This document shows, piece after piece, positions 17,468 to 19,952 of a DNA stretch of 64,000 nucleotides. Below the pieces are notes generated by a model. That model was not told the DNA's origin, did no database searches, and was given only the letters and a program-made list of their open reading frames with translations. The DNA is taken from positions 248,001-312,000 of IMG/VR virus record IMGVR_UViG_3300023184_000024; one strand, written 5' to 3'. A program made the translations under genes and the position numbers. Each line of letters starts with the position of its first letter. The stretch's first letter is position 1.

Positions 17468-18277
17468 ATGAAAAAACTTTTAATTTCCTTACTACTGGTA
17501 TCCTCACAGGCCTGGGCCTGGGAACAACGTGCCCCACTACCACCACAAGCCTGTCAAGTACACAGCCCATATGGCTTTGCCCAAACAAAAAGACCAACTC
17601 AGCCCATTTGTCGCGAAGCATATCTAGTGGCATATGACGCTCCTGTAAAGATTCCTGCGTATGTTGCTTATACATTAACACCTCCAAATGCACTGGGATG
17701 CTGGCCAAGAACAAATGCTTTTGTAGCTGATCGTTCAGTACAAGGTGGTGCTAGACCAGATGACTATGCCGGTACAGGCTACGACAAAGGTCATGCTGCC
17801 CCCGATGGTGATTTATCTTGGAGTGAGATTGTTGAGTACGAATCGTTCTTGATGACCAACATGTATCCACAACACGGATCACTTAATCGCGGTATTTGGA
17901 AACTGTTAGAGACGTCTATAAGAGGTTGGGCAGTGCAACTTAATCAGTCTTTTACCATCTACGTTGGCGCATTGTATGGCGCTGGCGACGAGTCGATTGG
18001 CAACGGTGTTATTGTGCCACACGGCTTTTACAAGATTGTGATCAACAATGCTACAAAAGAAATTGCAGGATGGAGTTTTCCCCACACCAAACCCTATGTT
18101 AACCTTGGCAACGACTTAACCAGCTTCCGTACAATGATTTCTAACATTCAAAGTCAAGCAGGTGTGCAATTTAAGTTTCCCAAGAACGCAAAAGAAATTA
18201 CCCCAGGCACTGAATGGCCTGTGAATTACGGCGCATTGACCAATGCAAAACGTGCCAAATGTGGCCGTGCCGACTAA
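17468..18277 (+). CDS. DNA/RNA non-specific endonuclease (NucA/Serratia family) with signal peptide
   Basis: YDKGH, MTNMYPQ...NRGIW..LE; N-terminus MKKLLISLLLVSSQAWA. Confidence 0.88.
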   Translation: MKKLLISLLLVSSQAWAWEQRAPLPPQACQVHSPYGFAQTKRPTQPICREAYLVAYDAPVKIPAYVAYTLTPPNALGCWPRTNAFVADRSVQGGARPDDYAGTGYDKGHAAPDGDLSWSEIVEYESFLMTNMYPQHGSLNRGIWKLLETSIRGWAVQLNQSFTIYVGALYGAGDESIGNGVIVPHGFYKIVINNATKEIAGWSFPHTKPYVNLGNDLTSFRTMISNIQSQAGVQFKFPKNAKEITPGTEWPVNYGALTNAKRAKCGRAD

Positions 18278-18281
18278 GAAC

Positions 18282-18363
18282 ACCCTTAGGACCGCACTAG
18301 TTGCGAGGGTACCCGGCTGCTGGGTTGGCCAAGCGATTCGCTACCGCAAAGTCTAAAGTGAGC
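18282..18363 (+). ncRNA. Candidate structured, pseudoknotted non-coding RNA upstream of terL
   Basis: About 58% GC (48/82) in an otherwise AT-rich intergenic context; three stems and two possible pseudoknots (see findings); no U-tract. Confidence 0.5.
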
Positions 18364-18386
18364 ATTAATATCAGTTAAATATTACT

Positions 18387-19952
18387 ATGTCTACAACTGA
18401 TATTTCGCTTATTAAAACCCCGTACAAGTCTGTCCTGTACAATGATCAACAACTTGAAGAATTTGCTCGATGTGCCGATGCAGTAGATGGTCCTATCTAC
18501 TTCATGGACAATTTCTTTTACATACAGCATCCTACACAAGGTCGAATGTTGTACCATCCGTTTGAATATCAACAGCGATTGATACACACATACCATAACT
18601 ATCGTTATTCGATTAGCTTGATGCCTCGACAAACAGGTAAGTCAACAAGTGCTGCCGGGTACTTGTTGTGGTATGCCATGTTTGTGCCAGATTCGACCAT
18701 TCTTGTGGCCGCACACAAGTATACTGGAGCACAAGAGATCATGCAACGTGTGCGTTATGCATATGAAAGTGTGCCTGATCATATCAGAGCTGGAGTCACA
18801 AGTTACAACAAAGGTAGCCTAGAGTTCGACAACGGAAGTCGTATTGTAAGTGCTACTACCACAGAAAATACCGGTCGTGGTATGAGTATATCACTGCTGT
18901 ACGCTGACGAGTTTGCATTTGTGCGCCCCACTATTGCCAGAGAATTCTGGACATCAATCAGTCCCACACTATCAACTGGTGGTAAAGCAATTATCACCAG
19001 TACACCCAACAGTGACGAAGATCAATTTGCCTTCCTATGGAAAGGTGCCAACAAGTGTGAAGATGAATACGGCAACCCCACAGAAGTGGGACAAAATGGA
19101 TTCAAAGCATACAGATCATTTTGGAACGAGCACCCTGACCGTGATGAGCGTTGGGCGCAGGAACAAAGAGCCGCGTTGGGAACTGATCGTTTCCGTCGAG
19201 AAATGGACTGCGAGTTCATCATCAATGATGAAACGTTGATAGCGCCAGCCAAGCTGATTGACCTACAGGGCGTAGATCCTTTGTACAAAACAGGTGAAGT
19301 ACGTTGGTATAAACGCCCAGAAAAAAACAAAATATATGTGGTGGGTCTGGATCCAAGTCTTGGCACAGGTGGCGACCCTGCCGCAATTCAAGTGTTTGAA
19401 GCAGACAGCACAGAGCAAATTGCTGAATGGCGGCACAATAGAACAGATATACCGACACAAATTAGGATACTTGCTGACATTATCAAACAGTTAAACGAAA
19501 CAGTCAACGACCCAAAAAGCATTTACTACAGTGTGGAAAATAACACCATTGGTGAAGCCGCATTGATCAGCATTGCTGAGTACGGTGAGCAAAATATACA
19601 AGGCTATTTTTTAAGTGATTCAAACAGTGGCAGCTCGGGACGTAGATTTAGAAAAGGGTTTAATACCACAAACAAGTCTAAATTATCTGCTTGTGCCAAG
19701 TTTAAACACTTGATCGAAAGCGGGCGTTTAAAAATCAAAAGTAGAAGTTTAATTTCAGAATTAAAGACGTTTGTTGCAATGGGAATCAGCTACGAAGCAA
19801 AAGCAGGCGAAACTGACGACCTTGTAATGTCCTCATTGTTGGTTGTGCGAATGATGCAAGTTTTACAAAGCTACCACAGCAATCTTGACGAACACATGCG
19901 AGATCATCAAGATACTATAATTGAACCATTGCCCTTTGTGATGACTATTTAA
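18387..19952 (+). CDS. terL: Terminase large subunit (gp17-like)
   Basis: PRQTGKST Walker A, YADEFAF Walker B, STPN, GLDPSLG nuclease motif, DDLVM; TAAATA at 18376. Confidence 0.95.
   Translation: MSTTDISLIKTPYKSVLYNDQQLEEFARCADAVDGPIYFMDNFFYIQHPTQGRMLYHPFEYQQRLIHTYHNYRYSISLMPRQTGKSTSAAGYLLWYAMFVPDSTILVAAHKYTGAQEIMQRVRYAYESVPDHIRAGVTSYNKGSLEFDNGSRIVSATTTENTGRGMSISLLYADEFAFVRPTIAREFWTSISPTLSTGGKAIITSTPNSDEDQFAFLWKGANKCEDEYGNPTEVGQNGFKAYRSFWNEHPDRDERWAQEQRAALGTDRFRREMDCEFIINDETLIAPAKLIDLQGVDPLYKTGEVRWYKRPEKNKIYVVGLDPSLGTGGDPAAIQVFEADSTEQIAEWRHNRTDIPTQIRILADIIKQLNETVNDPKSIYYSVENNTIGEAALISIAEYGEQNIQGYFLSDSNSGSSGRRFRKGFNTTNKSKLSACAKFKHLIESGRLKIKSRSLISELKTFVAMGISYEAKAGETDDLVMSSLLVVRMMQVLQSYHSNLDEHMRDHQDTIIEPLPFVMTI

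What the first reader, a model, noticed from the sequence alone, without database searches (positions are those of the whole stretch)
18282..18363. GC-rich candidate multi-pseudoknot RNA immediately upstream of terL
Seen: ~82 nt at ~58% GC. P1 ACCCT(18282-86)/AGGGT(18306-10) encloses a TAGGAC bulge and a CGCA/TGCG hairpin. P2 is ACCCGG/CTGGGT (18311-25). P3 is GCG/CGC (18333-47) with loop ATTCGCTAC. The P1 bulge can pair with GTCTA (18351-55), and the P3 loop TTCGCT can pair with AGTGAG (18357-62), giving two pseudoknots. There is no U-tract, and terL has its own TAAATA downstream, so it is not a plain terminator or the terL leader. Inference: a ribozyme, riboswitch-like or packaging-associated RNA. 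I cannot assign it to a known family.
Basis: partly seen in the sequence, partly recalled or inferred. Interest (0 to 1): 0.7.

Follow-up and report, generated by a model that had tools for sequence, protein, structure and literature searches.

The report
Phage RNA antisense to 23S rRNA
The GC-rich stretch upstream of terL is a real, widely conserved, pseudoknotted phage RNA of about 87 nt that matches no Rfam family, and its two invariant loops are exact antisense to adjacent parts of the universally conserved helix-69 region of bacterial 23S ribosomal RNA, which suggests a previously undescribed way for large phages to act on host ribosomes.

Summary
Window 18278-18364 (+) belongs to an RNA family found in more than 200 uncultured, mostly freshwater phage contigs and in Pseudomonas jumbo phage PA5oct. 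There is one intact copy per genome. Rfam 15 has no match, and no cellular genome holds it except one phage-like contig binned into a MAG.

Single-sequence folding is no better than shuffles. Comparison of 100-180 distinct sequences, however, shows compensatory changes in every helix: P1, the optional P1b, P2, P3a and P3.

GTC 18351-53 pairs with GGC 18327-29 (P3a). The 3' tail 18357-63 pairs with the P2 loop 18316-21.

The element is not specific to terL. In most relatives it lies upstream of an 87-aa gene and the DNA polymerase gene. This genome keeps a degenerate copy in that slot.

The two invariant loops, CCUUAGGACCG and UUCGCUACC, are perfect antisense to 23S rRNA nt 1920-1930 and 1929-1937. 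The strand after loop 1 also pairs with helix 69 (1909-1916).

Best reading: a trans-acting structured antisense RNA against the H69 region of host 23S rRNA. Binding, transcription in this phage and the effect on the host are untested.

The parts
18278..18364 (+). Whole RNA element (about 87 nt), from the conserved 5' flank to the end of the pseudoknot tail
   Evidence: Covariance models R1 and R2 match 18277-18368 at 107 and 105 bits. A homologous element occurs in more than 200 IMG/VR contigs.
18276..18281 (+). Conserved single-stranded 5' flank AAGAAC. It overlaps the TAA stop codon (18275-77) of the nuclease gene.
   Evidence: The flank (A/U)A(A/G)GAAC recurs directly after stop codons of unrelated upstream genes.
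18282..18287 (+). P1 5' strand ACCCUU. It pairs with 18305-18310.
   Evidence: 38 distinct P1 helix versions, always abutting P2. Compensatory changes are seen in A4.
18284..18294 (+). Loop-1 motif CCUUAGGACCG, partly inside P1 in this variant. It is perfect antisense to 23S rRNA nt 1930-1920.
   Evidence: Ten positions are invariant or show only A>G or C>U changes in 142 sequences. The antisense match is shown.
18294..18304 (+). P1b hairpin GCA-CUAGU-UGC. It is optional in the family. Its 3' half plus G18305 (UAGUUGCG, 18298-18305) can pair with 23S nt 1916-1909 (helix 69).
   Evidence: It covaries where present (helix 3) and is absent in minimal variants. 92 of 98 inserts carry GUUGC, GUUAC or GUUAU, all of which can pair with 23S 1910-1914. 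The duplex is shown.
18305..18310 (+). P1 3' strand GAGGGU. It directly abuts P2.
18311..18325 (+). P2 hairpin: stem 18311-14/18322-25 and loop 18315-21 (GGCUGCU). Loop nt 18316-21 form the pseudoknot with 18357-63.
   Evidence: Three of the 4 stem pairs show compensatory changes.
18327..18329 (+). P3a 5' strand GGC. It pairs with GUC 18351-53.
   Evidence: All 4 family positions of this helix covary. In the window 3 of them pair: G-C, G.U, C-G.
18333..18347 (+). P3 hairpin: GCG/CGC closing the invariant loop AUUCGCUAC (18336-44). UUCGCUACC (18337-45) is perfect antisense to 23S nt 1937-1929.
   Evidence: All 3 stem pairs covary. The loop is invariant even in sets collected without requiring it. 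The antisense match is shown.
18351..18353 (+). P3a 3' strand GUC.
18357..18363 (+). Pseudoknot 3' strand AGUGAGC. It pairs with the P2 loop GCUGCU (18316-21), with G18360 bulged.
   Evidence: Covariation: GCU/AGC versus GGU/ACC (15 of 39) and GCCAC/GUGGC. Further versions are GCCCCCA/UGGGGG, GCUACU/AGUAGC, GAACCC/GGGUUC, UCUCCCU/AGGGAGA and GCCCCAU/AUGGGGC.
18376..18381 (+). TAAATA, 5 nt before the terL ATG. It resembles a T4-type late promoter and is not part of the RNA fold.
   Evidence: (G)ATAAATAYTA followed by ATG recurs downstream of many copies: 46 of 142 have TAAATA within about 30 nt. The promoter reading rests on knowledge of T4-type late promoters.
17468..18277 (+). Upstream gene: DNA/RNA non-specific endonuclease. 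The element begins at its stop codon.
   Evidence: Pfam PF01223, E = 8e-36.
18387..19952 (+). Downstream gene: terminase large subunit. No Shine-Dalgarno sequence is visible upstream.
   Evidence: Pfam Terminase_6N and Terminase_6C, and PHROG terminase families.

Best explanation

**Fold**
- P1 presents loop 1, with or without an inner hairpin P1b.
- P2 follows directly and probably stacks on P1.
- The P2 loop forms an H-type pseudoknot with the 3' tail.
- The P3a/P3 hairpin sits inside that pseudoknot and presents loop 3.

**Proposed mechanism**
The scaffold holds two invariant loops whose sequences are exact antisense to adjacent segments of host 23S rRNA. Loop 1 matches nt 1920-1930/31, which is the 3' strand of helix 69 and the linker after it. 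Loop 3 matches nt 1929-1937. In most variants the strand after loop 1 is also antisense to the 5' strand and loop of helix 69 (1909-1916). I propose that the RNA is made as the tail of the upstream mRNA and acts in trans. It would work as a two-pronged antisense clamp on this region of 23S rRNA. The target is most plausibly nascent or unassembled 23S, or free 50S subunits, where the site is not buried. The consequence would be altered host ribosome assembly or function during infection.

**Shown**
- Conservation and covariation of all helices and of the pseudoknot.
- Strand polarity.
- One intact copy per genome.
- Restriction to phages.
- The complementarity to 23S rRNA.

**Inferred**
- Transcription in this phage.
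- Actual binding to 23S rRNA.
- The state of the target.
- The benefit to the phage.
For: **Family and fold**
- The exact 27-mer occurs in 60 IMG/VR contigs. There are about 180 distinct sequences.
- Covariation: 95.0% of cells are paired against 31-46% for slid partners, with 12 pairs changed on both sides. On 100 diverse sequences, 93.9% are paired against 28-44%, with 17 of 19 pairs compensatory and 0 of 500 shuffles reaching the score. That alignment is fitted to the model.
- P1 occurs in 38 versions. The pseudoknot occurs in at least 8 sequence versions.
- G.U pairs outnumber A.C pairs 67 to 21, so the + strand is the folded one.

**Not a known family, and limited to phages**
- Rfam 15 has no match for the window or for 17 variants.
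- Among 185,579 species genomes there is one hit. It is a contig with the phage 87-aa and polymerase context.

**Copy number and position**
- There is exactly one copy in each of 5 contigs of 156-300 kb.
- The window's own genome has one intact copy plus one copy with a degenerate 5' domain at C1:76944-77020. That copy lies in the canonical slot next to the Dps, 87-aa and polymerase genes.
- Immediate neighbours differ between contigs. This argues against control of one particular gene.

**23S rRNA complementarity**
- The target sequence is 100% identical in all 5,426 E. coli genomes, where it is annotated as 23S rRNA. It is also identical in Listeria, Staphylococcus, Acinetobacter, Klebsiella and Dickeya 23S fragments.
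- The longest antisense runs of the 142 elements map to 1920-1931 and 1929-1937.
- The predicted duplex of the window's 5' domain with 23S is -31.4 kcal/mol, 11 + 8 bp.
- Loop substitutions are almost all A>G or C>U, which keep pairing as wobbles.
- 92 of 98 inserts carry GUUGC, GUUAC or GUUAU, all able to pair with 23S GUAAC 1910-1914.
- 121 of 200,000 shuffles show an 11-mer antisense match plus a nearby 8-mer match.

**Distant homolog**
- PA5oct keeps both loops although its stems differ.
Against: **No evidence of binding.** No experiment or read-level data shows that the RNA binds 23S rRNA.

**Weak evidence of transcription.** Only assembled contigs of 3-4 metatranscriptomes hold relatives of the element, and DNA carry-over is possible. 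For the window's phage, only the shared 33-mer was found.

**Accessibility of the target.** From established ribosome structure, nt 1906-1924 form helix 69 and the region makes intersubunit bridges. In mature 70S ribosomes the site is therefore paired and buried.

**Steric strain.** Loops of 9-13 nt closed by a stem cannot form 8-11 bp without strain, or without opening P1 and P3.

**No covariation test is possible for the loops.** The target is universally conserved, so the loops cannot covary with it. Their invariance could equally reflect a protein, a ligand or a catalytic core.

**Benefit unclear.** It is not obvious what a phage gains by acting on rRNA.

**An alternative origin.** The loops overlap by 2-3 nt on the target and lie in permuted order. 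This could mean descent from a captured antisense rDNA fragment rather than present-day pairing.
Confidence: 0.45

Rival explanations
1. Cis-acting element at the end of a transcription unit. It would be a 3'-UTR structure that protects the upstream mRNA from 3' exonucleases, defines a processing or termination point, or tethers the terminating ribosome (through the 23S match) so that it re-initiates on a nearby start codon that lacks a Shine-Dalgarno sequence, such as terL's.
For: - It always lies on the coding strand and starts within a few nt of the upstream stop codon.
- It is followed by sigma70-like promoters (22 of 142), TAAATA motifs (46 of 142) or U-runs (19 of 142).
- Genes starting 10-25 nt downstream, terL included, show no Shine-Dalgarno sequence, whereas promoter-led neighbours carry AGGAG.
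- One metatranscriptome contig runs from the upstream gene through the element.
Against: - There is only one copy per genome of 156-353 kb, although each genome has many operon ends.
- Flanking genes differ between contigs.
- In L211 a canonical terminator hairpin follows the element, so the element is not itself the terminator.
- In many loci a promoter separates it from the next gene, which rules out re-initiation there.
- In this genome the copy in the ancestral slot decayed while a copy elsewhere stayed intact. That fits a function independent of position.
Confidence: 0.2
2. Self-cleaving ribozyme or ligand-binding aptamer. The invariant loops and junctions would form a catalytic or binding core, and the match to 23S rRNA would be incidental or only historical.
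For: - Its size, pseudoknot and invariant unpaired nucleotides between covarying stems are typical of small ribozymes and riboswitch aptamers.
- Scattered phage contexts resemble those of twister, hatchet and pistol, from knowledge of those classes.
- It matches no Rfam family, so it would be a new class.
Against: - No consistent downstream gene, which argues against a riboswitch.
- In many loci a promoter lies between the element and the next gene.
- A chance match of two pre-defined loops to abutting 23S segments is improbable: about 1e-7 by simple counting, and 6e-4 in a loose shuffle test.
- The extension of the match into helix 69 in most variants has no explanation under this reading.
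Confidence: 0.13
3. Protein-binding RNA: a scaffold, decoy or guide for a phage or host protein such as an rRNA-modifying enzyme or a nuclease. The loops would be read by the protein, or would guide it to 23S rRNA.
For: - Single-copy and position-independent.
- Invariant loops are displayed on a variable scaffold.
- Bipartite recognition of adjacent target segments recalls guide RNAs, from knowledge.
Against: - No protein gene is consistently adjacent. The most frequent neighbours (87-aa protein, DNA polymerase, deaminase-like and Dps-like genes) are absent from the window's locus.
- The loops are antisense to rRNA rather than identical to it, so they cannot be an rRNA decoy.
Confidence: 0.12
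4. DNA-level signal, such as a packaging site, a recombination site or an origin, or simply a GC-rich spacer with chance stems.
For: - In the window it lies next to terL.
- It sits in a region where genes are gained and lost.
- The single-sequence fold is no better than shuffles.
Against: - Compensatory changes include many G.U pairs on one strand only.
- Pseudoknot covariation is present.
- The element is absent upstream of terL in 76 or more relatives.
- An exact 27-mer in 60 contigs excludes chance.
Confidence: 0.03

Closest known systems
Two-loop kissing sRNAs and hairpin antisense RNAs (OxyS-fhlA; CopA-CopT; RNA I-RNA II)
   Same: - A structured RNA presents antisense sequence in hairpin loops.
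- Two separate loops contact two nearby target segments, as in OxyS-fhlA.
- An antisense hairpin faces a target hairpin (P1b against helix 69), as in CopA-CopT and RNA I-RNA II.
   Different: - The proposed target is ribosomal RNA, not an mRNA or a primer.
- The loops are held by a pseudoknotted scaffold.
- No terminator-type 3' end and no Hfq-type features are evident.
- Binding is untested.
H-type pseudoknot with an embedded hairpin (HLout type), as in preQ1-II and preQ1-III riboswitch aptamers
   Same: In the 3' domain, the P2 hairpin loop pairs with a 3' tail. A hairpin (P3a/P3) is inserted in the last loop, and conserved A residues precede the tail.
   Different: - No sequence or Rfam match.
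- No consistent downstream gene.
- An additional 5' domain.
- The invariant loops match rRNA.
EBS2/EBS1-IBS2/IBS1 recognition by group II introns
   Same: Two loops in 5'-to-3' order pair with two adjacent target segments in the same 5'-to-3' order. The 23S 1917-1951 region is a known hot spot for mobile introns, from knowledge.
   Different: The element is only about 87 nt, with no domain V or other intron domains and no intron-encoded protein. The surrounding sequence is ordinary phage genes.
Viral RNA elements that bind ribosomes or rRNA (calicivirus TURBS, BYDV-type 3' translation elements, TCV T-shaped structure)
   Same: A viral non-coding structure next to a stop codon, with complementarity to rRNA or affinity for the large subunit.
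   Different: Those are eukaryotic and act in cis on translation. TURBS and the BYDV-type element pair with 18S rRNA. Here the element is single-copy, often separated from the next gene by a promoter, and matches 23S helix 69.
phi29 pRNA (packaging RNA)
   Same: A phage-encoded structured RNA whose loop-loop pairs covary.
   Different: - No sequence or structural similarity.
- The host phages have T4-type terminases.
- The element is not linked to terL in most relatives.

Membership tests
Any Rfam 15 family (4,227 covariance models, including hammerhead, twister, pistol, hatchet, HDV-like, preQ1, SAM-II/V, glnA, ykkC-III, tRNA-like and phage motifs) | A covariance-model score at or near the family's gathering threshold | tested here: not met
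   - No hit at gathering thresholds in the 64-kb window.
- With E up to 10 on 18100-18560, only a chance miRNA match at 15.9 bits against a threshold of 74.
- Seventeen other variants gave only chance hits outside the element.
Intrinsic (Rho-independent) terminator | A GC-rich hairpin immediately followed by a U-tract | tested here: not met
   - The window has no U-tract after 18364.
- Only 19 of 142 relatives have at least 5 U within about 12 nt.
- L211 has a separate canonical terminator after the element.
Riboswitch or cis-regulatory leader | A consistent position in the 5' UTR of functionally related genes | tested here: not met
   Directly downstream genes fall into many unrelated clusters. 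In 22 or more loci a sigma70-like promoter lies between the element and the next gene.
Riboswitch or cis-regulatory leader | Specific ligand binding | not testable with these tools
   This needs in-line probing or ITC.
Small self-cleaving ribozyme | Site-specific self-scission | not testable with these tools
   The RNA runs are held only as assembled contigs, so molecule ends cannot be read.
HDV-like ribozyme | Nested double pseudoknot in which the segment after the P1 5' strand pairs with the 3' end (P2) | tested here: not met
   The 3' tail covaries with the P2-hairpin loop, not with the loop-1 segment. The proposed partner GTCTA is not conserved.
phi29-type packaging RNA | Present in phi29-like phages and functionally tied to the packaging motor | tested here: not met
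   The terminase is T4-type. The element is absent upstream of terL in 76 or more of 80 terL relatives and sits near the DNA polymerase gene in most loci.
Trans-acting antisense RNA | Extended complementarity to a defined target RNA | tested here: met
   There are 11-12 nt and 9 nt perfect antisense runs to 23S nt 1920-1931 and 1929-1937, plus 8 bp to 1909-1916. The target sequence was verified in real 23S genes.
Trans-acting antisense RNA | Expressed as RNA and bound to its target in vivo | tested here: inconclusive
   Relatives occur in contigs of 3-4 metatranscriptomes. There is no read-level or interaction data, and nothing specific for the window's phage.
Group II intron (EBS/IBS recognition) | Six-domain ribozyme with domain V | tested here: not met
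   No Rfam group II hit. The element is about 87 nt and lies between ordinary ORFs.

The most novel reading that the evidence does not exclude
Large T4-related phages, both PA5oct-like and many uncultured freshwater jumbo phages, carry a dedicated, pseudoknot-scaffolded RNA that base-pairs with helix 69 and the adjoining strand of host 23S rRNA. Through it they would interfere with, or reprogram, 50S assembly or ribosome function. This would be an RNA-based attack on, or takeover of, the ribosome, directed at a site identical in every 23S gene checked here and regarded as universal in bacteria.
Probability: 0.4. Interest if true: 0.95.

Novelty: categorically new. Interest (0 to 1): 0.85.

Why it matters
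If the RNA really pairs with 23S rRNA, it would be the first phage-encoded RNA known to target ribosomal RNA. It would be aimed at helix 69, one of the most conserved and functionally central parts of the ribosome: bridge B2a, tRNA contacts, release and recycling factors.

That would add an RNA mechanism to the emerging picture of huge phages manipulating translation. It would also explain the extreme sequence conservation of the loops, and give a natural lead for sequence-based interference with a universal bacterial target.

Even if that mechanism fails, this is a new, abundant RNA family with a well-supported pseudoknot fold. It is ready for structural and biochemical work, and a culturable model exists in PA5oct and P. 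aeruginosa.

One caveat on novelty: the motif may already sit unnamed among the 8,495 IMG/VR candidate structured RNAs of Fremin et al. 2023 (PMC10690425). I could not check that list.

Tried and rejected
- **Single-sequence folding** of both strands was no better than shuffles. It is useless as evidence here.
- **tRNA/tmRNA scan** found none in the window.
- **Nucleotide BLAST against GenBank phages.** The terL region (near mode) and two element variants (distant mode) gave no real match. The PA5oct homolog was found only with the covariance model.
- **Stop-codon read-through stimulator** was rejected. The reading frame relative to the element differs between loci, and two of the three frames hit a stop inside the conserved 27-mer (sequence inspection).
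- **HDV-like topology** was rejected (see membership test).
- **tRNA-like anticodon or T-loop mimicry** was considered and dropped. The loops are 9-13 nt, and the T-loop consensus is not met.
- **Integration (attP-like) identity to rDNA** was rejected. The segments are antisense, permuted and embedded in a covarying RNA fold.
- **A target inside the phage itself** does not exist. The genome has no GGTCCTAAGGTAGCGAA or sub-words beyond the element.
- **Literature string and keyword searches** found no description. The four ncRNAs annotated in PA5oct lie elsewhere. The Minerva preprint's phage ncRNA arrays are unrelated.
- **RNA evidence.** No RNA run holds the window. Runs found with a relative are stored only as contigs, and contig ends coincide with the borders of the shared sequence, so they say nothing about cleavage.
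- **Haliscomenobacter MAG** has no assembled 23S, so no host inference was possible.

Full report
**Setting.** The window is bases 248,001-312,000 of a complete 352,754-bp phage genome with direct terminal repeats. The finding lies in the 109-nt gap between a DNA/RNA non-specific endonuclease gene (17468-18277) and the T4-type large terminase gene (18387-19952). The closest cultured relatives by TerL are Pseudomonas phage PA5oct (54% identity), Sinorhizobium phage Phosso, Agrobacterium phage Atu_ph07 and the Rak2-like jumbo phages. The 82-nt span is 58.5% GC, the local maximum in a genome of about 43% GC.

**Checking the observation.** Folding the sequence alone gives nothing: the minimum free energy is no better than that of dinucleotide shuffles on either strand (z = +0.6, +0.9 and 0.0). 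Rfam 15 has no match at gathering thresholds in the whole window. At E up to 10 around the site it gives only a chance miRNA hit. There are no tRNAs.

**Relatives.**
- Of 80 loci encoding TerL at 74-85% identity, only two carry a homologous element upstream of terL.
- In one of them (L003) the upstream gene is different, yet the first 32 nt of the element are identical to the window.
- The exact 27-mer at 18283-18309 then turned up in 60 IMG/VR contigs in many gene contexts.
- Together these give about 180 distinct sequences.
- A scan of one genome for each of 185,579 prokaryotic species found a single hit. It is a 183-kb contig binned into a Haliscomenobacter MAG, and it carries the phage's own 87-aa and DNA polymerase context.
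- No GenBank phage matches by BLAST. The covariance model, however, finds a diverged member in PA5oct at NC_071039.1:115,467-115,565, between gp295 and gp294. It is not one of that phage's four annotated ncRNAs.

**Structure.**
- On 39 sequences sharing the 27-mer, 95.0% of cells form pairs against 31-46% when partners are slid. Twelve pairs show changes on both sides.
- On 100 diverse sequences aligned to the model, 93.9% pair against 28-44%. Seventeen of 19 pairs are compensatory, and no shuffle of 500 reaches the score. That alignment is fitted to the model.
- P1 (window 18282-87/18305-10) occurs in 38 helix versions and always abuts P2.
- The inner hairpin P1b (18294-18304) is optional.
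- The outer 4 bp of P2 covary.
- The 3' tail (18357-63) pairs with the P2 loop (18316-21). This pseudoknot covaries as GCU/AGC versus GGU/ACC and GCCAC/GUGGC. Further versions include GCCCCCA/UGGGGG, GCUACU/AGUAGC, GAACCC/GGGUUC, UCUCCCU/AGGGAGA and GCCCCAU/AUGGGGC.
GTCTA is partly P3a and is not conserved. When the tail varies, it follows the P2 loop while the P3 loop stays fixed.
- G.U pairs outnumber A.C pairs 67 to 21, so the + strand is the folded strand.

**Context and copy number.**
- The element starts within a few nucleotides of the stop codon of whatever gene precedes it.
- It is followed by sigma70-like promoters with AGGAG ribosome-binding sites, by (G)ATAAATAYTA motifs just before a start codon, or by U-runs. 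In one case a canonical terminator follows it.
- Immediate neighbours are diverse.
- A wider view shows conserved synteny. An 87-aa gene lies downstream in 91 of 142 loci, a family-B DNA polymerase in 47, a deaminase-like gene upstream in 83, and a Dps-like gene in 35.
- Each of five contigs of 156-300 kb has exactly one copy.
- The window's genome has the intact copy before terL. It also has a second copy at C1:76,944-77,020 whose 5' domain has decayed (29.6 bits).
- That second copy sits in the canonical slot between the Dps-like gene and the 87-aa and polymerase genes.
- An intact copy kept at a new site while the ancestral one decays argues for a function that does not depend on the neighbouring genes.

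**The loops.**
- Two unpaired segments are invariant even in sets collected without requiring them: CCUUAGGACC(G) in the P1 loop and AUUCGCUAC in the P3 loop.
- They are the reverse complements of adjacent parts of 23S rRNA, 5'-GGUCCUAAGG-3' followed by 5'-UAGCGAA-3'.
- I recalled this stretch from memory and then verified it. A 42-nt query is 100% identical in all 5,426 complete E. coli genomes at seven places each, annotated as 23S rRNA.
- It lies at position 1915 of the annotated gene, which is nt 1921 in standard numbering. The landmarks U1939 and C1962 fit.
- The same 42-mer is identical in 23S fragments of Listeria, Staphylococcus, Acinetobacter, Klebsiella and Dickeya.
- Across the 142 elements, the longest perfect antisense runs against 23S map to nt 1920-1930/31 (11-12 nt) and 1929-1937 (9 nt). 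Everything else is 7-mer background.
- In most variants the antisense continues into helix 69. In the window, 18298-18305 pairs with nt 1916-1909, and the predicted duplex for the 5' domain is -31.4 kcal/mol. Other variants reach -37 to -38 kcal/mol.
- Ninety-two of 98 inserts after loop 1 contain GUUGC, GUUAC or GUUAU, all of which can pair with 23S GUAAC 1910-1914.
- The rare loop substitutions are almost all A>G or C>U, which keep pairing as wobbles.
- In a loose test, 121 of 200,000 shuffles of the window element have an 11-mer antisense match plus a nearby 8-mer match.
- For two loops defined beforehand by conservation, simple counting gives about 1e-7 (my calculation).
- The phage genome itself holds no such target.
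- PA5oct keeps both loops although its stems differ.

**Interpretation.** The most economical reading is a trans-acting, scaffolded antisense RNA that grips the helix-69 region of host 23S rRNA with two loops. The nearest formal precedents are the two kissing loops of OxyS on fhlA and the hairpin-to-hairpin pairing of CopA with CopT.

The loop order (5' loop to 5' target segment) is that of EBS2/EBS1 in group II introns, not that of a plain antisense copy.

From established ribosome structure, the target is paired and buried in 70S ribosomes. Nascent 23S, assembly intermediates or free 50S subunits are therefore the plausible substrates.

What the phage gains is inference only. The possibilities include blocking new ribosome assembly, changing subunit association, guiding a modification or cleavage, or protecting the site.

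**Rivals.** These are a cis-acting 3'-end or re-initiation element, a new ribozyme or aptamer, a protein-binding RNA, and a DNA-level signal. Their evidence is given in the corresponding fields. The single copy per genome, the shifting neighbours and the extended rRNA match weigh against the first two. Strand-specific covariation excludes the last.

**Limits.**
- Expression evidence is weak. No RNA run holds the window. Contigs from three or four metatranscriptomes contain relatives. Only the shared 33-mer is seen for the window's type.
- No binding, cleavage or phenotype data exist.
- Literature searches by sequence string and by topic found no description.
- The motif may be among the thousands of unnamed IMG/VR candidates of PMC10690425, whose tables I could not read.

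Noticed in passing
Outside the window: G000:C1:76944-77020 (+) = L143:1491-1567: A second copy of the element whose 5' domain has decayed (CCUUAAAC instead of CCUUAGGACC) and whose P3 loop is shortened (UCGCUAC). P2, P3a and the pseudoknot are kept. It sits in the canonical slot, between the Dps-like gene on one side and the 87-aa and DNA polymerase genes on the other. A SPASM-domain ORF follows it directly.
   Followed up: partly
NC_071039.1:115467-115565 (+) (L265:1501-1599), Pseudomonas phage PA5oct: A diverged but complete homolog (25.7 bits) in the gp295/gp294 intergenic region of a cultured jumbo phage that has published RNA-seq data. It is unannotated and is not one of the four reported ncRNAs.
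   Followed up: partly
window 18376-18386, and downstream of many related elements: A recurrent (G)ATAAATAYTA motif lies 2-10 nt before start codons that lack a Shine-Dalgarno sequence. It looks like a T4-type late promoter giving near-leaderless mRNAs. Other neighbours have strong TTGACA-N17-TATACT promoters plus AGGAG.
   Followed up: no
window 17468-18277: The Endonuclease_NS gene immediately upstream of terL is found at that position in only a few terL relatives (L005, L019, L069, L076). In others it lies further away or is absent, so the region upstream of terL is variable.
   Followed up: partly
L259 (NZ_JBBAKG010000001.1, 183-kb contig of a Haliscomenobacter MAG): This contig carries the element with the phage 87-aa and DNA polymerase genes (85% and 77% identity). 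It is probably a jumbo-phage contig binned into the MAG. At most it is a weak hint about the host.
   Followed up: partly
L273:6597-6652 (-) and flanks: A variant with both invariant loops but no recognisable P2-loop/tail pseudoknot. Its long P3 hairpin is followed directly by a U-run, like a terminator.
   Followed up: no
L201:2446-2552 and L216:6138-6245; also PA5oct: In these variants the loop-1 motif CCUUAGG is paired within the RNA to a downstream CCUAAGG. The antisense sequence would then be masked inside a helix, which suggests an alternative or regulated conformation.
   Followed up: no
Loci around the element (clusters): Up to several paralogous 211-aa genes lie upstream of the element in 83 loci. 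They are deaminase-like (HxE...PCxxC-type motif seen by eye). Variable genes are inserted between the element and the 87-aa gene, so this is a hot spot of gene gain and loss.
   Followed up: no
GenBank 'phage' records H46-H55: Several short records filed as phages (for example Klebsiella phage Kpn_R1 and Listeria phage WIL-3) consist of host 23S rRNA sequence. They are probably host contamination in the phage collection.
   Followed up: no
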